Assembly (NCBI RefSeq): GCF_001194135.2
Contig: NC_068998.1
Coordinates: 55,106,035 to 55,161,936 of the forward strand
DNA: 55,902 nt
DNA from: Octopus bimaculoides
Taxonomy: Eukaryota
Reading direction: 5' to 3'
Shown here: in pieces, positions 1-53,060 of the stretch
Position numbering within the stretch: position 1 is the first letter of the stretch
Layout: each line of letters opens with the position of its first letter
The notes under the pieces: model-generated
What the model was told of the DNA's origin: nothing
Database searches by the model: none
What the model saw: the letters and a program-made list of their open reading frames with translations, nothing else
Translations under genes and position numbers: made by a program

Positions 1-380
1 ATGTATATATGTGTATATATATATGTGTATATATATATGTATGTATATATATGTTTGTATATATATGTATGTATATATATGTGTATATATATATGTATGT
101 ATATATATGTATTTATATATGTACGTATATATATGTGTATGTATGTATATGTATGTATATATATGTATATATATGTATATATATGTGTATGTATGTATAT
201 ATGTATTTATATATATATATATGTATATGTATTTATATATATGTATATATGTATGTATATGTATGTAAATAGATATGTATATATATATATATATATATAT
301 GTATATGTATATATGTATAAGTATATATGTATGTATAAGTATGTGTACATATATGTATGTATATATATATGTATATATAT
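1..380. repeat. AT/GT-rich low-complexity compound microsatellite
   Basis: Degenerate (TA)n/(TATG)n/(TG)n. It explains the Y/I/M/V/C-only ORFs at the start of the track. Confidence 0.95.
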
Positions 381-830
381 CATCATCATCGTATAACATC
401 TGCTTTCCATGCTGGCATGGGTTGGACAATTTGACTGAGGACTAGCAAGTCAGAATGCTGCACCAGGCTCCAATCTGATCTGGCAGAGTTTCTACGGCTG
501 GATGCCCTTCCTAACGCCAACCACTCCGAGAGTGTAGTGGGTACTTTTACGTGCCACCTGCATGAGGGCCAGTCACACAGTACTGGCAACTGCCACGCTC
601 AACAATGTGTTTTTTACGTGCCACCTGCATGGGTGCCAGTCTAGCAATACTAGCAACGATCTCACTCAAATGACTTTCTAACGTGCCACCAGCACAAGTG
701 CTAGAAGGCAACGATTACGCTCTAATGGTGCTATTTACGGGCCACTGGCATGGATGCTAGACGGCTGCTTTGGCAATGAGCACGCTTGACAGTGCTGTTA
801 GTTCACCACTGGCGCGGTGACCAAAATGTT
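381..830 (+). mobile_element. Interspersed repeat, probably SINE/LINE 3'-end derived, with internal ~65-bp subrepeats
   Basis: Begins catcatcatc...tttccatgctggcatgggttggac...ggatgcccttcctaacgccaaccact. Homologous copies at ~12742-12960 (+), ~22444-22620 (+), ~28635-28863 (-) and ~47208-47350 (+). The internal acgtgccac motif recurs about every 65 bp. Confidence 0.7.
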
Positions 831-7076: not shown

Positions 7077-10000
7077 TATGCATGTGTGTAAGTGTGTGTA
7101 CATGTATAGATGAGTTATACAAATACTGAAAACAAAAATAAAGTCCAAAATGCCATGTATTTGTTCATTTATTTAGATCTGAGATGTTACATCGTTGACA
7201 CAACAGCTTCAAGTTTCTTACCAGTATACCTATATTAAGTGCCTTGACATGAAACTCTAGGCTACTGAGTCACTGATGTAGCTTCTCTGGTTTAGGTTAT
7301 ACAATTTTATAAACATATCATTACAAGCATGCCTGTATGGTTAAGAATTTTATTTCACAACTCCATGCTTTCAGTTTCAGAGCAACCAATGTCTCATGTG
7401 TGAATTTGGTAGATGGAAGTGCTCAGAGCTTGAAGATTCCTTGGAGATACAAGGCACATTGTAAAAGCCTGCCTATCCACATGTCTTCATAGCAAAAAAC
7501 TATTCGTAGTTCTTATCTTAATACATTAAAAGATATTTTTATCACTGGACAGAGTACTTTTTTTGTTGATTTTACCTTAATAGAACAATAAACTTTTATA
7601 TATTATATATCCTTCTATCCTCTCTTACTTGGAAGAAGTCACTCTTACATGCTGTCACTCAACCTGCTAACCATAGCAGCCAAACTGCTAATCACTATTG
7701 TCTGAAACGAGGAAAGACAAACATATTGGCCAATTCGGTCTTCTCTATACCTAATTTTGGCTGTTATTGTTATGATCATAAGTCTTCTTATCAAGACTTA
7801 CTTTAGGCTGAATACCAACAACCTGTCTTTGTTAAGTTGGAGCAAACAGTGAAGCCAGACTACTTTGTGCTCAATTTTGAAGTATTAAAGTTCAAATTAT
7901 AAAAGGACCAAATTCTAAGTTTAAAGGAAATTTATATTTTCTTTAAAAAAATGTAATAGACTAATGCAAAATCAATCACTAGCTTTCTTTTTTACTTGGC
8001 ATTTTTTATAAAATGATTTAATTCCTGGTGATTAGGAATAGCAGGGTGTCAGGAACCTCCTTCATAATTTTAACTATTCCTGAAACATTTTGCACTAATT
8101 TGCAAAAGATGCTTTTAATATTAGGTTTTTGTTGTTTTAATATTGAAAAGTTATTGTTCTTTGTAACTATTGTATTTCACTTTTACTTCTAAATCCCATG
8201 GGAGAAATGAAAGCATCCATCTTACAACATCCAAGTTTTCCTCCTCTTCTGTATGAGGGAGGCTTTGTTCTGAAACAAAAGAAATTTTGATATCGTTTTT
8301 CAATATTAAACCAATACAAACTGAACTTTGGGGATGTTTTAATTCTGAATGTTGAGAAATTGGTTCATTAGCTTATTTTGCTAGTTAACCTTAATTACAT
8401 TGATGTAATTGCAAGCAATTACATCAGTGAAAGTTTATTAATGATACCTGTTAATTACTCTAAATATTTAGTTTGTCCCCTTATATTCTGATGACTTTCC
8501 AAAAATACCACCCCACCCATCTACCCATTTCTGGTATCACAGAATTTTTTTTGTTTTTATTTCAAGAATATTTCATGAAATGAGAACTTCAGTCAGTCAT
8601 TTTTATTCTGAAATGATGGAGGGTGGGGGTCTACTGACTGACTGGCTATCGTTTTCTGAAACTTTTTCATTAAAACATTTTTTTTTTCTCTCACACACAC
8701 AATTAAAGCAGGTCATCTGTGGTGTTTTTACAAAATTGTTTTTTTATTAATGCAAAAATTGCCAATTGTAAGGGATTTGAAGATTTTGCTTAACTCTAGT
8801 TAAGAAATCTTGTATTACAATCATTTCAATGTAGAAATGTTTTTTTTTTTTACTGTTACTTAAAATATTCCAGCTGAAAGAAATTAGAATTGCATCACAT
8901 ACCAAAGTATTTTTAGTCTTTCATTAAAAACAGCAGCTACCATGGATATTTTATACATTTTTGAGGCTGGTATAGTTGCCACAAGCAGTACTAAACTGGA
9001 CTAAAATGCTTTACAGTTGCTTTTAGTTGGTATTTTACTATTGCAAAATCAATTCATGCAGGGCTCATCTTTATTTGTTATTATCGTTTATGAATCTCTT
9101 GAGTCTTCTTCAACATTCTAAGGCTTGCTCATTTGTTCTGTTTGAAATTGTTTCATTTTCAATTTAACTTTCTTGTGTTCCACTTGTTGATATCAAAAAA
9201 ATGTTTTTTTTTGACATTTAATATCTGCATCTTCTTAATTATGTCTTCCAATTTTCAGTACGGTTCTCCTATCAGTTCCAAACTAACTTAATTGTTTCTA
9301 CCAATTTTCACCTTTTAGTATTGTTCACATCAAGGTCCCCCTTGATCCCAACAACTAAGTCACTGTAGAGACATGATGTTGGGGTCAGCTTCCTGTTTAT
9401 TTATTTCTTCCACAAGATGTACTCATTTGGTTCAACGAGTGTTAACTAGCTGATACCATGGTAACAGATTTCCCTTAATTAGATTTGGTTGTTTCATTGC
9501 AATGGTAGCATATTTGAAGTATAGTAACTGCTGCAACTTGGCAAATGACAGCCGTTAGCTTACTCTTGCTACATTGAAACCGTTGGATTATTGATTGTAT
9601 GTCTGCTGCAACGATTGCTTTATATACTAACAACTATTAGAATCCCATTTGAGGCAGACTGATGACAACTCTAGCAACATCACTCTTCTCTTTTTCTCAA
9701 CTCAATAGTTACCTAGTATCCCCCCCCTCCAACTTTCTGTAATAAGCATTGAAGACTGACCAACATTCACTGCTTATTCTCTTTCTCTTTCTCTTCTTCT
9801 TGTCTGAAGTGTCCTCTATATTGAAGTAACTTTTTAACTATACATATTATTTCATAATTTCAACTTAGCTAATCACATGATACAATGTTTGTCTTTTAGT
9901 TACGACTCAATACTTGAGATTTAGATCAGTTTGTTGTTGTTGTTGATAGACTCATGGACTGTTTCAGTTTGTTTTATTTCTATTCAGTTATATTTCTTTA

Positions 10001-10453: not shown

Positions 10454-10578
10454 GCAGACATGTAAACATTTTGCTCCCAACCACATGGTCTCAGGTTCAG
10501 TCCCACAATGTGACACCGAGCAAGCCAAAACCCTGTGAGTGAGTTTGGTAGAAGGAAACTGAAAGAAACCCTTTGCAT
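10454..10578 (+). mobile_element. tRNA-head-like SINE family copy (partial)
   Basis: cccaaccacatgg...ggttcagtccca...gtgagtgagtttggtagaaggaaactgaaagaa, homologous to the copies at 20352-20512 and 52898-53060. Confidence 0.7.
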
Positions 10579-11872: not shown

Positions 11873-12057
11873 GGACTGGTGAGTCTGGAAAGAGTACATT
11901 TATCAAGCAGATGAGAATTATCCATGGTGCTGGGTACTCTGAAGAAGACAGAAAAGGCTTTGAGAAAATTGTTTACCAAAATATATTTTCAGCCATACAG
12001 ACTCTTATAGCTGCAATGGAAACGTTGTCTTTAGAATATAAGACTTCTGGCAATAAT
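11873..12057 (+). CDS. GNAQ: Galpha-q exon 2 (185 nt): P-loop and start of helical domain
   Basis: Acceptor tttaag|GG ACT GGT GAG TCT GGA AAG; encodes [61 protein letters not shown]; donor AAT|gtaagt. Confidence 0.97.
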
Positions 12058-19168: not shown

Positions 19169-19323
19169 GAAAATGCTGAATTCATAAATTCAATAGATGC
19201 CGATTCAGCTGATACTTTTGATCAGTCACATGTTGATGCAATAAAGTCTCTCTGGACAGATGAAGGAATGCAGGAGTGTTATGATAGACGAAGAGAATAC
19301 CAACTTACAGATTCAGCTAAATA
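19169..19323 (+). CDS. GNAQ: Galpha-q exon 3 (155 nt): helical domain
   Basis: Acceptor ttttgcag|GAA; encodes [51 protein letters not shown]; donor TA|gtaaga. Confidence 0.97.
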
Positions 19324-20351
19324 GTAAGAAATTTTTTTGTTTTTTGTTTTAGCATTTTATTATTTAAATGTATTCTAAGTATTTTGAAGTCATTTTAGTG
19401 TTTTATCCGACAAAACTTTGTTGTTTAATGAATTTTTAAAAACAAAAAATTTAAACTGGAAAATTTTGTTCTTGGTTTTGCATTTACTGTTTAGAGAATA
19501 TCTTCATTCTTTCTCAAGTGTGATTGAAATTACTCTAGGAACTGTTCATTTTTGTACTGGATTTCTGACTAGCAAATGTGGAACTGGAGTAAATGAATGT
19601 TAAATGATGATACCATTGAGGCAAAGTGTTCTGATGGAAGACTTCACTTTCTATGTCAAAATCCTTGTTAAAGTTAAGCCCTTCTCTTTCAAGTTGTAGC
19701 AACAATAGGAGTTGAACTAACAAAACAGTCATTGATTTTCTGGCAGTACTCCAATTTACAACAGTGAGTTGTTCGTACTGTACAGTAATTAGTTATAGTT
19801 AGTAGACTGTATAGTAATTAGATACAGCTCATAGATTTGACTGTTGGATAGTTAAGTGTTTTTTGTATTGGAGACAGAATTCAGATCTGATGATAGGGGA
19901 CAAACAACTGAACCTGTTAGCTGGTTGTCAAGTTTCTTATTGATTCAGTCAACTCTACTTTCATGGGAAGCATACCAATTATTCTAAGCATTTACACTGC
20001 TTCAGACAGAGCAGCATGGGGGGGGGGGGGATCTCTGAGTAAAAAAAAACTGAGTTCTACATATTTACAAGATTGGATATTTGAGAGAAGTCTTTTAATG
20101 TTCCTTTATTTTACTGCCAAGTAAATTGAGGAATTATCATCATTTGACATCCAGTTTTCCATGCTTGCATTACTTGGACAGAATTTGTTGAAGCAGATTT
20201 CTGTGATGAGATACTGCCCACGTTGCCAACCCTCAACTCTTTCCAAGCAAGACATGCTTTTTGTGGAAGACTGGAAACTAACAACACCACTTGTCTGGTG
20301 GTGAGGATCATTTACAATGATTACATGATGTCTAAATGAAGTACACACAAA

Positions 20352-20512
20352 CAGGCTTCCTTCAGTTTTCACCTACCACAGCCACTCACAAGGCTTTGGT
20401 TGGCCTGGGGCTATAGTAGTAGAAGATACTTCCCTTAGGTGCTGTACAGTGGAACTGAACCAGAAACCACATGGTTGGGAAGTAAGCTTCTTAACCATAC
20501 AGCCACACTTGC
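20352..20512 (-). mobile_element. tRNA-head-like SINE family copy
   Basis: Reverse complement gcaagtgtggctgtatggttaagaagcttacttcccaaccatgtggtttctggttcagttccact has A/B-box-like motifs; same family as 10454 and 52898. Confidence 0.75.
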
Positions 20513-21579: not shown

Positions 21580-21708
21580 TTACCTAGATGATATTGATCG
21601 TATCCATGAACCTGGGTATATCCCAACATTACAAGATATTCTTCGAGTGCGAGTACCGACAACTGGTATTATAGAATATCCTTTTGATTTGGATAGTATA
21701 ATTTTTAG
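21580..21708 (+). CDS. GNAQ: Galpha-q exon 4 (129 nt): Switch I with catalytic Arg
   Basis: Acceptor tttccag|T TAC; encodes [42 protein letters not shown]; donor AG|gtgagt. Confidence 0.97.
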
Positions 21709-25056: not shown

Positions 25057-25510
<454 letters not shown>

Positions 25511-26694: not shown

Positions 26695-26950
<256 letters not shown>

Positions 26951-28634
26951 GTAGTCAATAGATAGTAATTTTTATTCTGTGTTAGTTTTGTAAATAAGGA
27001 TTAATATGAGTAGCAAAGTTTAAAAAACCCCAGTTTTCCTCTCTTCCCCATTCATTGTAGTTTAATGACAAATGTAAACAAGACTGTCACCATTGGAAAC
27101 TCTGATTTCTTATTAATAGATCTGTCATAATCAAGTTTGTTTTAACTTCTATAACTCAACTATTTCATTGACAATGTTTTTATTGAAAATATTTGATTTT
27201 TCCTAGTTTCATGTAAAATTATTGACCACACAAATTCAAACATGAAGACACAATTCCAATCCCCCTAAATGATACCAAAAAGGGTTCATTATATTCATTA
27301 TCTCCAGCTTTGTGCAAGTTAGCCAAACACCTGTGAAACCACCTGATGAAAATATTGACTAAATTTCTACAACAATCACCATTAAAGGCCTGACAATTAT
27401 TATATGGGTAAATGCCAAAATGAAACGAGTCATTTAGGTTGCTCCTATTTCCTCTGCAAAAACTGTCAGCTCTTTTACTCCCGAGTCACACGTGTGGCAT
27501 ATTTGGAGTATTTTACAAATACACCTATGACAGTTTTGCTCAAAGGACTGTAAAATATTTAGTAAATTACTAATTTGTTCAAATGAATTTCCAGTTCAGT
27601 TAAATTTGGAGTGAATATGTTATGTAAAGAGATTGTAAACTAAGGTAGCAAGATTGCATTGAATAGAATGCTTAAGACTGTATATTCCAGCTCTCAGCAT
27701 TTTGAGTTCAAACCTGCCAAAGTCAAATTTACTTTTTGCACTCCAGGCCAGTTTTGGGATCAATCTTTCTAATTTTCTAATTGACTTTGTTCAGACCTGT
27801 AGGGGAGATGATCTCTGCCAGGTTTTGAAATACCCAAACTATGTTGTGTGTGTGTGTACTATATATATATAAATTGTTTCTAGGATCCTCAAATTACTTG
27901 CAAATCACTTGACTATATATAAATATAGACTCAAACTTAAGAAACTAAAATTTCTTTAAAATTTTCTTAATTTGAGACTTGAAATATGGTTTCTTCTACT
28001 TCAGTACAAATTAAGAATTTGATTTTCCTCTCTCTACTATATTTGAATCTAGGGACATTTTAGTTACCTTTTGGGTTGACATTGAATTATCTTGTGTTTC
28101 GATTAGAATGGCTGATAGATTTTTTATATAAACTACTCCTGGCATTTTCAGTTCTAAAAATGTACAAATATATACATGTTATTGATGGATCTTTCTTTCT
28201 TTCTTTCTTTCTTTTAGCAGCTTTATTCCTTTTATTCTCCACATTGTCTAGTTCAATGTTGCTATCAATGACTGGGAGAGTTTAATATGTTTTAAATACT
28301 GCCTCTAACCCTCAAGATTCCAGATGGTAAAACTGATGGAATATTATTATAGACAATGGTTATTAATGTTCGTAAATATTCATAAAACATCCAGCTAAAT
28401 TATCAACACTGAGCTTTTATATCAATTCAGTTTTACATTCTGAAAATTTTATAATGAAAATTATTTTTGACCAAAAAAATTGCAAATTACTAAATTGCTT
28501 AATGAAGACTTTAAACTGTGAGAGACAGTTTGGTCTTAGCAGAGGGAGAGTTTAGAATCTAAAGTTTCCCATAAGGATATTCAATAATGTTTTTATCTCT
28601 AAAGTTATCCTTAGTTTTTGACATCTTGTAGTGT

Positions 28635-30364: not shown

Positions 30365-30472
30365 GTCCAAAGAAAGATGCACAAGCTGCCAGAGAATTCA
30401 TATTGCGAATGTTTGTTGATTTAAACCCAGATCCTGATAAAATTATATATAGTCATTTCACATGTGCAACAG
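30365..30472 (+). CDS. GNAQ: Galpha-q exon 7A (108 nt), canonical-type alpha4-beta6-TCAT exon
   Basis: Branch point-like CTAAC at 30337-30341; acceptor tgatttcag|GT CCA; encodes [36 protein letters not shown]; donor ACAG|gtatgt. Closely resembles the canonical metazoan Gq sequence ([15 protein letters not shown]..[11 protein letters not shown]). Confidence 0.96.
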
Positions 30473-30528
30473 GTATGTCTTGTTAAGATTCCTCATTTCA
30501 CGCTTCATCTGTACTCATCTGATTTCAG

Positions 30529-30636
30529 GGCCCAAGTGTGATTATAATGCTGCCCGAGAGTACATGATGAATTGTTACATGGACCTCAATGAAGATAAGG
30601 AAAAAATGCTTTATTACCATTATACTTGTGCAACAG
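30529..30636 (+). CDS. GNAQ: Galpha-q exon 7B (108 nt), divergent duplicate; alternative to 7A
   Basis: Acceptor tgatttcag|GG CCC; encodes GPKCDYNAAREYMMNCYMDLNEDKEKMLYYHYTCAT; donor ACAG|gtatgt. Same length and phase as 7A, no stops, TCAT intact. Confidence 0.94.
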
Positions 30637-31303
30637 GTATGTGAGACTAAGCACAAAAAAAAAAAAAAAAAAAACAAATAGGAGAATAGTAGCAGCCAGC
30701 ACAGTTGTCTCCCTTCGCTGTTCACCTCGCCAGCTCTGAAATAGTTTTCCTATGTCATAAGTGTGAAGAAATGCGGCTGACATTTCTATTCCTGGCTTTC
30801 AACTATAGATCCGGTTTCCAAAATACAACACATTTCCCTTAGTACAATACAATTATGGTATTTGAGTTAATGCTTTTAGATTTTAGTCTTTGTAACTTCA
30901 AAGATGCACAAACATTGCAAAATCCTATTGTTGAAATTTGTATACAATGTTCCTTTTTATGTTTAGATCTGATATTTTGTAGTAACCTCCAAATTTTGTG
31001 GCTCTTTCCCAGCTGGTTTTTTTAAAGAACCAAATACCCATTAATTAGAAATTAGCTTCCCTAAATATTGGTGCTAAAATTTATCCCATTTTGGTGCTTG
31101 CTTTTAATGTAATGTGAAAAAATTTGGTATCCTGCAAACTGTTCATGTTTAGAGAATTAGATGTAACTTGGATATAACAAGTTATTTTGAGCAAAATGTT
31201 TAAATACGTTGTGTCAGGTAAAATTAGCTTCATAAGACTGTTGGTACAAAAATATAACACACAGTGAAATAATACCATATATATATATTATAGTAATATT
31301 TAG

Positions 31304-34667: not shown

Positions 34668-34717
<50 letters not shown>

Positions 34718-36466
34718 TTGTTTTCTTGTCATTAGTGTCTTCCGTAGATCACCACTTTTCCAACCACCACCACTCACCTTTTCATTTTATATTTCCATAT
34801 CAGTTTTTTTCTCTCCTACATGCTTTTATTTCTGGTATTAAAAAATAGGTAAGATACAATTTCAGTTGGCATTCCAGTCTCTGGAATAAAGATCTCTTGT
34901 TTAATACGGGGAAATATCAGAGGATTATGTTAAAATGGCAGCAACACTGAAGAAGCAAGCCAAGAACAGCTTCGGTTTTTGAGATATGATAATTTAGAGC
35001 TGTTAATTATTGTGTGTATTGATGCTTTTTCTTGGAGATATTTCAATATTTTAGTAGCTAGGAAAAGATATTGGAACAATAGCAAAGCACATCTTGGTCT
35101 GAAGAAAGCTAAGTCAGCAAATCTTGTCTTTGTAATTCTGTGTTGAGAAACTCCTTCAGGTGTTCCAGTTTCATGTACTCCTGGAAAGCTGATATAGCTC
35201 ATATATAGTGGAAGTGCAGGCTTATGAGATCCCTTCTTTATTGCCAAGGGGTAATCAACCTGTCTGGTATTGAAGCCCTGAGAAAATGCCCCCAGTCTGC
35301 ACTGTTAAAGTGGTTTTGTGGTAGGAGGAAGGGCATCCATTCATGGATACCAAATCAGTTGCCTTGTATGGACATCTATTGATTCATTCCAACATGGGAA
35401 GCAGATGTAAAAATGGGCGAGGATGATATATTCCACACCAATTTCCATCGTCATCATTTAATGCGTTTTCCATGCTGCCTTGTGTTCCTCTGTATGACTT
35501 ACCATTGTTGTTACGTCTTAACTTACAGCAGAAATAATCTTTTTCTCTTCATACAAAAGACCAAGATTGTTGATATTTTAAGCAAATAACAAAGCTTTTC
35601 TTCTCAAAATGTTGATTGCTCATTTATTATTCCCCAAATATATTTGATTTTCTTTTCTCTTCTGCTCCTGTTGACACCATTTGTTTAAATCAGTTCATTT
35701 ACTCTTTGTATCCCTCTTATTTGGATCAAAGGAGTAAAAATATGACCTAATCCTTGTGTACATATATTTCCATGTGTAGCACCACCTCACCCAGAAAAAA
35801 AAAACCTCAAAAAGAATGAGAAATGATGGTGTTTGGTGGGGAACTTGAACTCCACTGCCAACTGATGTCAGATGTTCAAAGATCACTGAGAAAATAATTA
35901 TTCTCTGTTCTTGATTTTAGATTCATTCTATAATCACTCTTTTACCAAAAGTCAGGGAATTACATTGGTCAGCATGTCCTTTCATTTTTAAGATGGTAGA
36001 GTGTGATTTGAGGAAAATTTAGCTGCCATTTCCAGCAGATTGACCAACAATTTAGACACACCATTGCTGACTACAATAAGCTTGGTAAAGCAAATCCGAA
36101 GTTGTGGAATAGTTTAGATGTTGACAAATGGTTTGGTTACAGGTTCAATTTCTATTCTGCGTCTTTTTTTTTTTTTTTTTTGGAAAGAATCCTTTACCAA
36201 AACATCAGGTTAACAAATGTGTTGAGCAGAATTTAGCTGAGGAGAAACTCTGTGTGAACTAAACTCAAATCTAATAATTTGTGCCCAACGTCTTCTTGAC
36301 TAATTAATATCTCTTCAAATTAGAATTTGTTTTTAGCCATTTTCATGTCTAATTTTGCATCATTGAAACAGTTTCTTTTCCAGATGACGCTTGGTTCCTC
36401 CAAATGATGAGCGTAAGAATTATTTTATGAAATTTTTTTTTTGTTTTCACTTTATATTATATTTGA

Positions 36467-42130
<5,664 letters not shown>

Positions 42131-45100: not shown

Positions 45101-48100
45101 AAAGGAGAAAAAAACCCAGATAATGTAGTTCCTGTACTTCTCAAAATGGATTACTCAGTGTGGGCTTAATCAGGATTACCTGGGGTTAAACAGTCTGCTA
45201 TGTATGGACTTGTGGCGAAATCAGCAGGGTTGCTTTCAATTTGTTTATTTGATTAAATCAATTTGATCTGCCTTAAAAGACTGGCATGAATTGATTTAAT
45301 GAAATCTCTTGTGCTTGCCTATGTTAACATGATTCTATGGCAATGTAGAACAGAAAGAGACTTCCTTAGTTTTGCTAGAGAAAGGATAAAATGCATCTCA
45401 TACTCTGTAAAGGGATTGGTTTTAAGGTCATCACGCCATACAAGATGTGATCCTCCAACTGCATCTAGTTGAGTAAAACTCTGAAGAAGGGGAATTGGCT
45501 GGGTTCATGCTAATCTAGCCACGTGACAGCATGGGAGAGTAGGCGTGTGATGATTATGGCTGTTCATTCAGTGTGGGGAAATTCTGTGCATTTCTCTTGT
45601 CACCCAATGATTACAAACTAAAGACAATTTCTTCTGTTAAAGGACGTGAATAAACGACCTAAAATGTCTTTGTCTTGTAGGAATCTTAAAGATCCTAGAA
45701 GAATCGGTTTTCTTGAGTCTCCTCTCTCGTTTACAATTCAGTAATGTAACAATAAAAACTCTACAATACAAACCATTCACTAATGAAGAGTTGTTAAGCC
45801 TGGTGCCAGCCGTCATTGAGCAGACCTATGATGATATACTTCCCAGCCAGGACCTACCCCAACTCGTAGTTGGCTAAGTGCATCTGGGACTACATTCTCA
45901 AATGCATCCTTTATTTCTAGGCAACTGGTTCATGATTAACTGAAATTTATTACAGCTTCAATGACTTAAACTGATTCACCCAGGTAACTATTTAAGCGAG
46001 ATGAACCGTCATTGAGGAGAGTTAAATTTGGAGTCTTGTACTAATTGAAGGTACAGATGTCCCCGTTTTTGTTGGTGCATCATTTTATTAACGATTAGAA
46101 TTGCTTTAGAAATGTGAAGGGTAAGATGCTAGATTTCACACTAACTTCGTTGCAAGAAGAATTAACGTTTTATGAACTTCACTGGTAAATTATTCCACAC
46201 AGTTTCATTAATTTATTTTTTAAACGGCTCTCTAGGAAACGGTATTAAGCAGCTCATTTCGTTATGATCCTTTTATCTAAGACTTTGGTTTTAAATACGA
46301 GTAAAAATTAAAAACCTGAACAAAACTACAATGTGACAAGTGATGATGTTGTATTTCAGTTAACTCGATGCTTTAAATACTGTTACGAAAGGAAAGGTTG
46401 ACCACACTTTAATAGTGGAATGGAATGTCAAACGATTCCGGTAGACATGGGTTTAAAATCTTTCGAGAAGCGTTAAATAGCAATACGCTGACTGTTTTAT
46501 TCAGTCGGCAAGTTTCGTGATAGTACAGCACGACAGCCCAGGGTCATGAGGTTAAAGGTAGCTGTTTAATAAATGGAAAGGTTGCGAGCAGGGGAGACAA
46601 TTATGGTGTGACTAAGATACTTGGGGTTTTTGTTGATGGCAAGTTAGGGTTAGCTCCCATGAAAGAACTGTTTTGTTGACATAAGGTTATATCAAGACTA
46701 GAAACTATATTTTAGAAAGACATTAAAAAATCTTTTTAGTATCCAGAAGCCTTTTAAAACATTGAAATTACCAAATTTGAATATAATGTTTGTGGAGTGA
46801 TTCATCCACTAAAATGAAAAATAAATTAATCATTGTGATATTAAATATTGTCAATCAATGAAATTTAAGATTGTTTTATGCAAGTTTTTAAAAATGAATA
46901 GCCAAACTTCCATGTTCCAAAACAGGTTGAGGTTGAAGCGTCTGTATACTTGCCATGCTTGAAGTCTGATAAAATGTTTTGTGCTGCTGGGAATATTATG
47001 TTTCAGGTGTTGAGTGACTGAAAGACACAATCACATGACACTGTCGGTTCTGGTCCAGTGGACATCATCAAAGCCATTCCAATTGCGATCATATCATTTT
47101 TGCATATCAAGAATTCCATGGCTGATTGGGTTAATCCTTTTGTAACATGGATTTGGCTGCTATTTCAGGTCAAGCAATCATAGTGAGGCAGCCTCTTTGG
47201 TTTGTCATCATTTAACATCCGTTTTCTATGCTGGCATGGGTTGGACAGTTTTATAGGGCCCAACGAACTACATCAGGCCCCAATGTCTGCTTTAACATGC
47301 TGTATAAGGTTGGATGACCTCCCTAATGGCACCAACTTTACAGTGTGTATTGGGTACTTTTTTCAAGACTGAACAATGAGATTGGCAAGTAACATTCAAA
47401 ACAAAGGCAAGAAAGGGAAAATCCCTCCCATCTAAGTGTGTCTGAGATAGGAGGAGGAGGTGGTGGATTTCATGTGAGGTGTTGAAGGTTAAAAAGTACG
47501 GCAGAAAGGATAACAAGCACAGATGTCTTTCTGTGAGGGAGATGCATAGCTTTCCTGCAATTATGGGAAAATGTGTGAGAGTAGCTAGCAGGGAGACCAT
47601 AAGTTAGTAAAGCATACACACAAGGTCCAAGAAGGGGAATCTAATGAATATAGACAGAGTTTCAGACAGGAAGGAAAAGGTGGGTCATTTCACTAGGATG
47701 TGGAAGGAGAATGACAAAGCAAGTTCACCTTCATCATTTGAAGCCAATTCATTTAACTTCTGGTGATCCCCGAGAGAAGCTGAACATCACACTTGCTAAC
47801 GTGTGAAAAGATGGTGCCTGCTGCCCCATAAACGAGTTGCATGAAAGAAATATGATTAATAAGGAAGGCTTTTGTCAGAAAATGTTTTACTGATGCAAAT
47901 AAACATGAAAATCAAATGAGTGAGTAAACAAATAAAAATTAATTAAGAAAATTTATATTCAGGAAAATAAATCAGATGTCAAGTATTGCAAGGTTAAACA
48001 TTGAATTGGGACAAATGTGACCAAAGATTTTCAAATTATCAGACAAAATAAATTAGTTGCTTATTATTTTGCAAAACTATGATGTTTAATGTATTTTGTT

Positions 48101-52350: not shown

Positions 52351-52897
52351 ATATGATATATTAATAAATATACTACTAGTAGTTACCGCGTCGATGCTAA
52401 GTGAATTAGCGCAGGATTTGAACTCACAATTATAACGTTCTAAACTAGCTACAGTTAAATATCATAATATCCGACCGTTTGTATAAAATCCCAACACACA
52501 CACACTCATGAATCCATTAGACTGTGAATAAATTACATTAAAACGATGTTGAAAGTCTCTTGTTGGTCTTGGAAAATTGAGTGGCGCAAAATGAAGGGAT
52601 TTTTCTTCCCCCCCCCCAAACCCCCAGATAAAATCACAAAGTCTGTACGAGTTTATCCGTGGAAAGATGCGTTCTTTTGCATAAGTTTAGAGACTTGGGT
52701 GCAAAATTGTGCTTTACACATTGGAAGATACATACACGCACACATATACATACATACATACATACAAACAAAAATAACCCTGTTGTTGATGTTGAAATTC
52801 AAAATAAGGAGCCTTGGATGTAGGCTAGAGACTGACTCTTTCTCTATTGGCAAGAAATCTTGAAATAAAACTGACTAATGACACGTGCGCGCGCGCG

Positions 52898-53060
52898 TAC
52901 GACGGGCTTCTTTCAGTTTCCGTCTGCCAAATCTATTGACAAACTTTTGGTTGACTCGAGGCTATAGTAGAAGACTCTTGACCAAGGTACCATGCAGTGG
53001 GACAGAACCCAAAACCATATGGCTGGGAAGCAAACATCTTATCGCGCAGTCACATATGCA
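52898..53060 (-). mobile_element. tRNA-head-like SINE family copy
   Basis: Contains tacgacgggcttctttcagtttccgtctgccaaatc and gaggctatagtagaagac; same family as 20352-20512. Confidence 0.75.

What the first reader, a model, noticed from the sequence alone, without database searches (positions are those of the whole stretch)
30365..30636. Tandemly duplicated, apparently mutually exclusive exon gives two Galpha-q proteins from one gene
Seen: two 108-nt exons of identical phase, 164 nt apart, sharing the acceptor TGATTTCAG and the 16-nt junction TGTGCAACAG|GTATGT. 7A encodes [36 protein letters not shown] and 7B encodes GPKCDYNAAREYMMNCYMDLNEDKEKMLYYHYTCAT (19/36 identical). Both are stop-free with the G5 TCAT motif intact, so neither looks like a pseudo-exon. 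Known: 7A is the canonical metazoan Gq sequence, and Drosophila makes visual and non-visual Gq isoforms by alternative splicing in the C-terminal region. From memory (needs checking), 7B resembles Gq cDNAs cloned from squid/octopus retina. Inference: one locus encodes a general Gq and a photoreceptor-tuned Gq by exon switching, possibly evolved independently of the fly system. I cannot confirm whether this has been described for cephalopods.
Basis: partly seen in the sequence, partly recalled or inferred. Interest (0 to 1): 0.88.

Follow-up and report, generated by a model that had tools for sequence, protein, structure and literature searches.

The report
Octopus Gq gene's two alternative exons
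The octopus Gq signalling gene carries two tandem copies of one 108-base exon and uses one or the other, giving a standard Gq and the "visual" Gq long known from squid retina; this is real, but public gene annotation already lists both forms.

Summary
Two 108-nt, same-phase exons lie at 30365-30472 (7A) and 30529-30636 (7B), with matching splice sites and 19/36 identical residues. They sit in an eight-exon G-alpha-q gene; exons 2-8 are in the window.

The window is Octopus bimaculoides. Its exon chains match RefSeq isoform X1 (7A, XP_052830406.1) and X2 (7B, XP_052830407.1) exactly.

Exon 7B is the type found in squid retina cDNAs: Loligo forbesii P38412 and Doryteuthis pealeii "visual iGq-alpha". 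Exon 7A is the canonical Gq sequence.

RNA contigs from one squid or cuttlefish species are nucleotide-identical outside this 108-nt block, so the two forms come from one gene. Both exons are under purifying selection: 7A has dN = 0 and 7B has dN/dS of about 0.1.

The pair is present in Argonauta and in a decapodiform. It is absent from oyster and Lingula, which have a single exon 7.

Arthropods duplicated the same exon in a different layout, which favours an independent origin.

The intron between the copies is only 46-61 nt. This probably blocks 7A-7B splicing sterically; that step is inferred, not tested.

Tissue specificity was not measured here. Novelty is low because the isoforms are already annotated. 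I found no paper that describes them as mutually exclusive exons.

The parts
11873..12057 (+). G-alpha-q exon 2 (P-loop GTGESGKS onward). Exon 1 lies upstream of the window.
   Evidence: tblastn with a Gq probe; ag/gtaagt boundaries and in-frame assembly; exact match to P0243/P0249.
19169..19323 (+). G-alpha-q exon 3 (helical domain).
21580..21708 (+). G-alpha-q exon 4 (129 nt, switch I). This is the exon duplicated in arthropods and some fishes; it is single here.
25074..25203 (+). G-alpha-q exon 5 (DVGGQ, switch II).
26737..26890 (+). G-alpha-q exon 6 (NKKD box). Its donor is used with either 7A or 7B.
30365..30472 (+). Exon 7A, the canonical copy. It encodes [36 protein letters not shown] and is used in isoform X1.
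   Evidence: It is 100% identical at protein level across all cephalopods seen. dN = 0 against Argonauta and a decapodiform.
30473..30528 (+). 56-nt intron between 7A and 7B. It is the proposed steric block to 7A-7B splicing. Read-through of it gives the stop ...TCAT-GMSC*.
   Evidence: Length. The equivalent intron is 61 nt in Argonauta and 46 nt in a decapodiform. O. vulgaris CAI9735770.1 (P0247) ends in GMSC.
30529..30636 (+). Exon 7B, the divergent 'visual-type' copy. It encodes GPKCDYNAAREYMMNCYMDLNEDKEKMLYYHYTCAT and is used in isoform X2.
   Evidence: It matches XP_052830407.1 exactly and is 32/36 identical to the Loligo forbesii retinal Gq P38412. dN/dS is 0.08-0.13.
36513..36595 (+). 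Exon 8 coding part ([27 protein letters not shown] plus the stop codon). It is a single copy shared by both isoforms.

Best explanation
The window holds exons 2-8 of the Octopus bimaculoides G-alpha-q gene. One 108-nt exon has been tandemly duplicated.

**What the splicing does.** The spliceosome joins exon 6 to either 7A or 7B and then to the single exon 8. This gives two 353-residue proteins that differ only in 36 residues.

**What the exon encodes.** By homology to solved G-alpha structures, these residues form the alpha4 helix, the alpha4-beta6 loop, strand beta6 and the TCAT (G5) guanine-contact motif. Established knowledge links this surface to receptor contact and nucleotide exchange.

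**The two forms.** 7A gives the canonical, pan-metazoan Gq. 7B gives the form that was cloned from squid retina.

**How exclusivity is probably enforced (inferred).** Joining 7A to 7B is most likely prevented because the intron between them is only 56 nt. That leaves about 27-34 nt between the 5' splice site and the candidate branch points, below the roughly 40-50 nt that well-studied spliceosomes need. Exclusivity cannot come from frameshift and mRNA decay, because 108 is a multiple of 3.

**What is shown:** the exon pair, its use in separate transcripts, selection on both copies, and its distribution within coleoids.

**What is inferred:** the steric mechanism, retina enrichment of 7B, and a receptor-coupling or kinetic difference between the isoforms.
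For: **Anatomy and gene model.**

**Identity of the locus.** The window's exon chains are exact substrings of XP_052830406.1 (X1) and XP_052830407.1 (X2).

**Retina-derived and 'visual' cDNAs carry 7B.** P38412, AAM77353.2 and ACB05682.1 do so. D. pealeii has both forms deposited: AKI33347.1 (7B) and AKI33348.1 (7A).

**Transcripts.** RNA contigs L005/L006 (7B) and L007-L012 (7A) have identical UTRs. All 41 coding differences fall at CDS positions 882-978, inside the exon-7 block (875-982).

**Conservation of the pair and the short intron.**
- Argonauta has a 61-nt intron and a decapodiform has a 46-nt intron.
- Every other intron of the gene in the window is 1.5-7 kb.

**Selection.** 7A has dN = 0 with dS up to 0.76. 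7B has dN/dS of 0.08-0.13.

**By-product expected from an unspliceable mini-intron.** The annotated O. vulgaris product ends TCAT-GMSC*. This is exactly what the window encodes if the 7A donor is read through.

**Protein family.** The best solved-structure matches are G-alpha-q, at E = 3e-192.
Against: - No read-level junction counts were available, so low-level co-inclusion or skipping of both exons cannot be excluded.
- Argonauta hians GAB1607557.1 (389 aa) contains both exons. It is an unnamed 'hypothetical protein' in a genome record; I take it for an automatic gene prediction, but no transcript was checked.
- The minimum spliceable intron length in cephalopods is not known to me. The copepod Tigriopus has a 51-nt gap between its exon-4 pair in a genome where short introns may be normal.
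- Retina specificity of 7B rests only on the source names of cDNAs. The one octopus cDNA found, O. vulgaris BAA93638.1, carries 7A.
- The AlphaFold model of isoform X2 was too poor (mean pLDDT 52.8) to map the substitutions.
Confidence: 0.85

Rival explanations
1. 7B is a decaying pseudo-exon left by a duplication and is not used.
For: It is much more diverged than 7A from the metazoan consensus. It appeared in almost no fragment-level protein hits.
Against: - Full-length transcripts and cDNAs from at least five coleoid species carry it.
- It is stop-free, with intact splice sites, in three lineages.
- dN/dS is about 0.1.
Confidence: 0.01
2. The two protein forms come from two paralogous Gq genes, not from one gene.
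For: Databases hold two D. pealeii Gq proteins as separate entries.
Against: - Both exons lie 56 nt apart between a single exon 6 and a single exon 8 in the window, in Argonauta and in a decapodiform.
- The two transcript types are nucleotide-identical, UTRs included, outside the 108-nt block.
Confidence: 0.01
3. The cephalopod 7A/7B pair and the arthropod visual/non-visual exon-7 pair descend from one ancient protostome duplication that was lost in bivalves, brachiopods and other groups.
For: - The same exon, with the same boundaries, is duplicated in both groups.
- Both divergent copies share F17Y and mostly I27M.
- In both groups the divergent copy is the one linked to vision: by cDNA source names in cephalopods, and in Drosophila by the literature listed in PMC4553527.
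Against: - The order is reversed: the divergent copy is downstream in cephalopods and upstream in arthropods.
- Arthropods also pair it with a duplicated exon 8 and exon 4, which the octopus lacks.
- Oyster and Lingula have one copy.
- 7B is closer to canonical exon 7 (18.4/36) than to arthropod 7v (16.7/36).
- A scan of 1.84 billion representative proteins found 7B-like sequence only in cephalopods.
Confidence: 0.1
4. Mutual exclusivity is set by competing RNA secondary structures (docking and selector sites) or by a hairpin that masks one donor, not by intron length.
For: RNAalifold draws a small hairpin over the 7B donor in the two octopods.
Against: - The 321-nt region folds no better than shuffles (z = -0.23).
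- The covariation term is unfavourable, at +1.57.
- The donor hairpin is not significant (z about -1.3). In the decapodiform it is stronger on 7A than on 7B.
Confidence: 0.1

Closest known systems
RefSeq isoforms X1 and X2 of 'guanine nucleotide-binding protein G(q) subunit alpha' in Octopus bimaculoides (XP_052830406.1 / XP_052830407.1), with equivalents in O. sinensis and O. vulgaris
   Same: They are the same locus and the same two products. The window's exon 2-6 + 7A + 8 chain and its 2-6 + 7B + 8 chain are exact substrings of these proteins.
   Different: Nothing differs at sequence level. The annotation gives no mechanism, tissue pattern or evolutionary context.
Squid 'visual' Gq-alpha cDNAs (Loligo forbesii P38412; Doryteuthis pealeii AAM77353.2 and AKI33347.1; Euprymna scolopes ACB05682.1)
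   Same: All carry a 7B-type segment, 32/36 identical to the window's 7B in L. forbesii, flanked by the same exon-6 and exon-8 sequence.
   Different: They come from decapodiform species. Some also carry one extra Glu at the exon 5/6 junction. They were deposited as single cDNAs without gene structure.
Arthropod G-alpha-q alternative exons (Drosophila dgq visual versus general isoforms; Anopheles gambiae exon pairs D/D*, G/G*, H/H*, as summarised in PMC4553527)
   Same: The same 36-residue exon, with the same boundaries, is tandemly duplicated. One copy stays canonical and the other diverges. Parallel F17Y and I27M replacements occur.
   Different: - The divergent copy is upstream of the canonical one.
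- The intron between copies is about 355 nt in Tigriopus, against 56 nt here.
- Exon 8 and exon 4 are also duplicated (7v-7c-8v-8c and 4a-4b). The octopus has a single exon 8 and a single exon 4.
Mutually exclusive exons in deuterostome G-alpha genes (Lokits et al. 2018, PMC5896119)
   Same: The principle is the same: a local single-exon duplication in a G-alpha gene gives mutually exclusive variants at protein-interaction surfaces. GNAO's exon 7-8 pair likewise covers the receptor-coupling C-terminal region.
   Different: Different exons and lineages are involved: GNAQ/GNA11 exon 4 in fishes, amphioxus preGNAQ exon 5, vertebrate GNAO exons 7-8. That study did not cover protostomes.
Steric-hindrance mutually exclusive exons such as alpha-tropomyosin exons 2/3 (from general knowledge, not checked here)
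   Same: Two alternative exons are separated by an intron too short for the 5' splice site and branch point to be used together.
   Different: The mechanism is only inferred here, from intron lengths of 46-61 nt in three lineages. No branch point was mapped.

Membership tests
G-alpha-q/11 class of heterotrimeric G-protein alpha subunits | G-alpha fold with the nucleotide-binding boxes GxGESGKS, DVGGQ, NKKD and TCAT | tested here: met
   All four boxes are present in the assembled model. PF00503 is precomputed on the matching proteins. The best solved-structure hits are G-alpha-q, at E = 3e-192.
G-alpha-q/11 class of heterotrimeric G-protein alpha subunits | Gq-class C-terminus ...[11 protein letters not shown] and N-terminal MACCLSEE (dual Cys) motif | tested here: met
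   The C-terminus is encoded at 36513-36595. The N-terminus is not in the window because exon 1 lies upstream, but it is present in the exactly matching RefSeq proteins P0243 and P0249.
Mutually exclusive exons derived from tandem exon duplication | Adjacent exons of equal length and phase with homologous sequence and their own splice sites | tested here: met
   Both exons are 108 nt, in phase 1/1, with ag...gtatgt sites. They share 19/36 residues and 64/108 nucleotides. tblastn gave E = 3e-9 for 7B.
Mutually exclusive exons derived from tandem exon duplication | Mature transcripts contain one copy or the other | tested here: met
   Decapodiform RNA contigs differ only in the 108-nt block. cDNAs and RefSeq isoforms with 7A or 7B exist in six species.
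Mutually exclusive exons derived from tandem exon duplication | Transcripts with both copies or with neither are absent or rare | tested here: inconclusive
   Neither type is among the assembled contigs or curated isoforms seen. No read-level junction counts could be made.
Mutually exclusive exons derived from tandem exon duplication | Both copies are maintained by purifying selection | tested here: met
   By the Nei-Gojobori method, 7A has dN = 0 and 7B has dN/dS of 0.08-0.13 across Octopus, Argonauta and a decapodiform.
Steric-hindrance type of mutually exclusive splicing | The intron between the two exons is too short to be spliced | not testable with these tools
   Intron lengths of 56, 61 and 46 nt were measured. 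Candidate branch points sit 16-29 nt upstream of the acceptor, read from the sequence. A read-through product is annotated in O. vulgaris. Whether the intron can be spliced needs an experiment.
Arthropod G-alpha-q visual/non-visual exon system | Duplication of the homologous 36-residue exon | tested here: met
   Tigriopus has 7v at L017:3640-3747 and 7c at L017:4103-4210. Termite, ant, wasp and fly proteins or ORFs contain both copies.
Arthropod G-alpha-q visual/non-visual exon system | Divergent copy upstream of the canonical copy, coupled to a duplicated exon 8 and a duplicated exon 4 | tested here: not met
   In the octopus the canonical copy is upstream. tblastn with arthropod 8v, 4a and 4b found only the single exons 8 and 4.
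Arthropod G-alpha-q visual/non-visual exon system | Common descent of the duplication | tested here: inconclusive
   A single exon 7 in oyster and Lingula, and 7B being nearer to the canonical copy than to 7v, argue against common descent. Nautilus, gastropods and annelid genomes were not examined, and 36 residues give little phylogenetic power.

The most novel reading that the evidence does not exclude
Cephalopods and arthropods independently duplicated the very same 36-residue alpha4-beta6 exon of Gq, and each turned one copy into a photoreceptor form. The parallel replacements (Phe17 to Tyr in every member of both groups, Ile27 to Met in all cephalopods and most arthropods) would then be convergent. 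That would point to these residues as the adaptation of Gq to rhabdomeric rhodopsin. For cephalopods, a natural candidate contact is the long cytoplasmic TM5-TM6 extension of squid rhodopsin; this last point comes from my own knowledge and was not checked. No paper in the searched library states this.
Probability: 0.45. Interest if true: 0.5.

Novelty: already known. Interest (0 to 1): 0.27.

Why it matters
As a discovery it adds little. The two isoforms are already in RefSeq for three Octopus species, and the 7B form has been in the databases as the squid retinal Gq (P38412).

Its value is as a clean case for two questions.
- **Gq and rhodopsin.** How is a G-alpha subunit tuned to a very abundant, fast photoreceptor GPCR? 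Only 17 residues differ between the isoforms, all in alpha4, the alpha4-beta6 loop and beta6.
- **Convergence.** Did animal lineages with advanced rhabdomeric eyes reach the same exon-level solution independently?

It also flags annotation errors. Argonauta hians GAB1607557.1, and many arthropod and fish Gq entries of 389-432 residues, contain both copies of alternative exons.

Tried and rejected
1. **Protein search with a 70-residue query (exon 6 end + 7B + exon 8).** It returned only short canonical fragments.
2. **Protein search with a 41-residue 7B query.** It found one genomic ORF only. The likely reason is that full-length 7B isoforms are about 95% identical to 7A isoforms and so can fall within their 90% clusters. 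The full-length search plus cluster listing solved this.
3. **AlphaFold2 of isoform X2 with a 31-sequence alignment.** Mean pLDDT was 52.8, and below 50 over most of the GTPase domain, so the model was unusable and no fold search was run. The structural assignment of exon 7 rests on homology to solved G-alpha-q structures and on textbook G-alpha anatomy.
4. **RNA structure as the exclusivity mechanism.**
   - The region folds no better than shuffles.
   - There was no covariation.
   - The donor hairpin was neither significant nor consistent across lineages.
5. **A possible alternative exon 8 at 45435-45479.** The hit had E = 4.1 and contained a stop. It was not recovered with arthropod 8v probes, so I treat it as chance.
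6. **P0297 / L018.** This 7B-like-looking fragment ('HHYTCAT') is a single divergent exon 7 followed by exon 8 in an AT-rich metagenome eukaryote. It is not a 7B orthologue.
7. **Genomic look-ups of termite P0129 and wasp P0205.** Both failed because the proteins were not on record.
8. **Horseshoe crab locus.** It has a single 7v-type exon 7, with no second copy, and did not help on the question of common descent.
9. **Literature searches.** None found a paper describing the cephalopod exon pair. Two look-ups by DOI and PubMed id, for the 2015 cephalopod skin-phototransduction paper that I recall as the source of AKI33347/8, found nothing held.
10. **Pfam scan of the ten longest ORFs in the window.** It found nothing credible.

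Full report
**1. The observation**

- Exon 7A is at 30365-30472 and exon 7B at 30529-30636. Both are 108 nt.
- Both are preceded by TGATTTCAG and followed by GTATGT, and both end in TGTGCAACAG.
- With one G carried over from the previous exon, they translate to [36 protein letters not shown] (7A) and GPKCDYNAAREYMMNCYMDLNEDKEKMLYYHYTCAT (7B).
- They share 19/36 residues and 64/108 nucleotides. The other two frames of each exon contain stops.
- The "164 nt apart" is the start-to-start distance. The intron between them is only 56 nt (30473-30528).
- A tblastn of a Gq probe against the whole 55.9-kb window found 7A at E = 4e-17 and 7B at E = 3e-9. No other exon has a second copy.

**2. The gene**

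The window carries exons 2-8 of a G-alpha-q gene on the + strand:

| Exon | Coordinates |
|---|---|
| 2 | 11873-12057 |
| 3 | 19169-19323 |
| 4 | 21580-21708 |
| 5 | 25074-25203 |
| 6 | 26737-26890 |
| 7A | 30365-30472 |
| 7B | 30529-30636 |
| 8 (to the stop codon) | 36513-36595 |

- All exons have ag/gt boundaries.
- Exon 1 (residues 1-40) is not in the window. In Argonauta the first intron is about 41 kb.
- Because 108 is a multiple of 3, including both copies or neither keeps the reading frame. Exclusivity therefore cannot be enforced by frameshift and mRNA decay.

**3. Identity of the locus and what is already on record**

The exon chain with 7A is an exact substring of P0243. This is XP_052830406.1, isoform X1 of O. 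bimaculoides; the same sequence is also on record as O. sinensis XP_029645859.1 (isoform X1) and O. vulgaris CAI9735767.1. The chain with 7B is an exact substring of P0249, which is XP_052830407.1, isoform X2 of O. bimaculoides. The window is therefore O. bimaculoides, and both products are already annotated. An older O. bimaculoides protein set, carrying XP_014784547 and XP_014784548, also has both.

Other species on record:
- O. sinensis X2 and O. vulgaris CAI9735768.1 carry slightly different 7B exons.
- Squid sequences whose names or source tie them to vision carry 7B: Loligo forbesii P38412, D. pealeii "visual iGq-alpha" AAM77353.2 and Euprymna scolopes ACB05682.1.
- D. pealeii has two consecutive GenBank entries that are identical outside exon 7: AKI33347.1 (7B) and AKI33348.1 (7A).
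- The one octopus cDNA, O. vulgaris BAA93638.1, carries 7A.

**4. One gene, one exon swapped**

For one decapodiform species, full-length RNA contigs from public RNA-seq runs encode the 7B form (L005, L006) or the 7A form (L007-L012). L005 and L007 have identical 5' and 3' UTRs. All 41 coding differences lie at CDS positions 882-978, inside the 108-nt exon-7 block at 875-982. This rules out paralogues and shows a clean swap of one exon.

**5. Conservation and selection**

- Argonauta hians has 7A and 7B separated by 61 nt (L013:65630-65737 and 65799-65906).
- A decapodiform genomic contig has them separated by 46 nt (L001:157-264 and 311-418).
- The 7A peptide is identical in every cephalopod seen, and in some bivalves. 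dN = 0 while dS reaches 0.76.
- 7B changes at a few positions, with dN/dS of 0.08-0.13. Both copies are therefore functional.
- Divergence between 7A and 7B is saturated at synonymous sites (dS about 2), so the duplication is old. It predates the split between octopodiforms and decapodiforms.

**6. Distribution and relation to the arthropod system**

*Outgroups.* Crassostrea angulata and Lingula anatina have the same 108-nt exon 7 and a separate exon 8, but only one copy. A full HMMER scan of 1.84 billion representative proteins with the 7B peptide found 7B-like sequence only in cephalopod ORFs.

*Arthropods.* They have duplicated the same exon. Over-long gene predictions from termite, ant and wasp, and genomic ORFs of fly type, contain a divergent copy followed by the canonical one.

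The copepod Tigriopus locus shows the full layout:
- exons 4a and 4b, separated by a 51-nt gap
- then 7v, 7c, 8v, 8c in that order

PMC4553527 summarises three homologous, alternatively spliced exon pairs in Anopheles, and five Gq splice variants in Lygus, one of them head-specific.

*How the octopus differs.*
- The canonical copy is upstream.
- Exon 8 and exon 4 are single.
- 7B is closer to canonical exon 7 (18.4/36) than to arthropod 7v (16.7/36).

An independent origin is the better reading. The two divergent copies nevertheless share Phe17 to Tyr (all members of both groups), Ile27 to Met (all cephalopods, most arthropods) and a Val18 change. The overlap of changed positions, 6 against about 4 expected, is not by itself significant.

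Lokits et al. 2018 (PMC5896119) describe mutually exclusive exons in deuterostome G-alpha genes, but in other exons, and they did not treat protostomes.

**7. Mechanism**

*Shown:* the two exons are used alternatively.

*Inferred: how joining 7A to 7B is avoided.*
- The intervening intron is 56, 61 or 46 nt in three lineages, while all other introns of the gene in the window are 1.5-7 kb.
- Candidate branch points (TTCAC, TTCAT, CCCAC) lie 16-29 nt upstream of the 7B acceptor. That leaves about 27-34 nt to the 7A donor.
- This is below the roughly 40-50 nt needed in well-studied systems (general knowledge; the classic case is alpha-tropomyosin exons 2/3).
- O. vulgaris annotation contains a 330-residue product ending TCAT-GMSC*. 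This is exactly the read-through of the 7A donor that the window predicts (GGT ATG TCT TGT TAA). Such a by-product is expected if the mini-intron cannot be removed.

*RNA-structure alternatives found no support*.

*Inferred: what the swap changes.* By alignment to solved G-alpha-q structures and textbook G-alpha anatomy, the exon encodes alpha4, the alpha4-beta6 loop, beta6 and the TCAT motif. This surface is implicated in receptor contact and selectivity and in nucleotide release. A difference in rhodopsin coupling or in activation kinetics is the natural hypothesis. It was not tested, and my structure model was too poor to help.

**8. Tissue pattern**

This was not measured. There are two indirect hints.
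- The "visual" names and retinal source of the 7B cDNAs.
- Among the members of one 90%-identity cluster, full-length 7A forms were recorded on many more contigs (23, 15, 8 and 4) than 7B forms (2 and 1). This fits broad 7A and restricted 7B expression, but it is weak evidence.

**9. Verdict**

The feature is already annotated, and its visual form is long known. I found no paper in the available library that describes it as a mutually exclusive exon pair or compares it with the arthropod system. That comparative point, possible convergence on the same exon, is the only part with some freshness.

Noticed in passing
Decapodiform proteins P0252, P0253, P0256, P0258 versus P0122, P0254, P0255; corresponds to the window's exon 5/6 junction (25203 | 26737): Squid and cuttlefish Gq transcripts come with or without one extra Glu at the exon 5/6 junction (DNE-E-NRMEE versus DNE-NRMEE), and this occurs with both 7A and 7B. 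It looks like a 3-nt alternative splice-site choice. Octopus proteins lack the extra codon, and the window shows no obvious alternative site.
   Followed up: no
window 26895-26953: A perfect 28-nt tandem duplication (GTAAAAAGCCCCGATGCCAGTGCATTTT, 2.1 copies, 100% match) starts 5 nt after the exon 6 donor. Each unit begins with a donor-like GTAAAA.
   Followed up: no
window 30461-30478 and 30625-30642; L013 7A and 7B 3' ends: The last 10 exon bases plus the donor are identical between 7A and 7B within O. bimaculoides (TGTGCAACAG|GTATGT) and within Argonauta (TGTGCTACAG|GTATGT). The same synonymous A-to-T difference separates the two species in both exons. This may be local gene conversion between the copies, or coincidence at one site.
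   Followed up: partly
window 30419-30472 (7A 3' half) and 30583-30636 (7B 3' half): Between octopus and a decapodiform, the proportion of synonymous sites that differ is lower in the 3' halves of both exons (0.20 and 0.35) than in exons 2-6 pooled (0.56). About 45-60 nt runs are invariant in three lineages. This is a weak hint, on small numbers, of nucleotide-level constraint such as splicing enhancers.
   Followed up: partly
window 8847-8957 and 30843-30922: Two non-coding blocks are conserved with Argonauta at syntenic positions. One is in intron 1 (84% over 116 nt) and one is about 200 nt downstream of 7B (75% over 85 nt). They may be regulatory elements, and they are not conserved in the decapodiform contig.
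   Followed up: no
window 356-537; also 10524-10577, 20350-20443, 52897-52996: These are interspersed repeat families. The about 150-nt element at 356-537 has more than 30 copies in both orientations within the 78-kb Argonauta Gq locus, and a second family recurs three times in the window.
   Followed up: no
P0244 (Argonauta hians GAB1607557.1); P0126-P0160 and others: Many database Gq proteins of 389, 396, 402 or 432 residues contain both members of alternative exon pairs in series: exon 7 in Argonauta, exons 4 and/or 7 in arthropods, and exon 4 in sharks and teleosts. These are probably gene-prediction artefacts rather than real proteins.
   Followed up: partly
P0124 (Octopus vulgaris BAA93638.1 / Q9NL92): This cDNA-derived protein differs from the genome-derived O. 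vulgaris Gq at otherwise invariant positions (for example YPPDLDSTILRMADVGG versus [17 protein letters not shown]). This suggests sequencing errors in the old clone.
   Followed up: no
L017:2190-2318 and 2370-2498 (Tigriopus californicus): The copepod's alternative exon-4 pair is separated by only 51 nt. This is the same 'very short intron between duplicates' design as the cephalopod exon-7 pair, whereas its exon-7 pair is 355 nt apart.
   Followed up: no
window 1-380, 37217-37340, 40204-40290, 34672-34724, 30656-30676: These are simple repeats: (TATATATG)-like arrays, (CT)43, a 53-nt poly-T run, and a poly-A run about 20 nt long starting 20 nt after the 7B donor.
   Followed up: no
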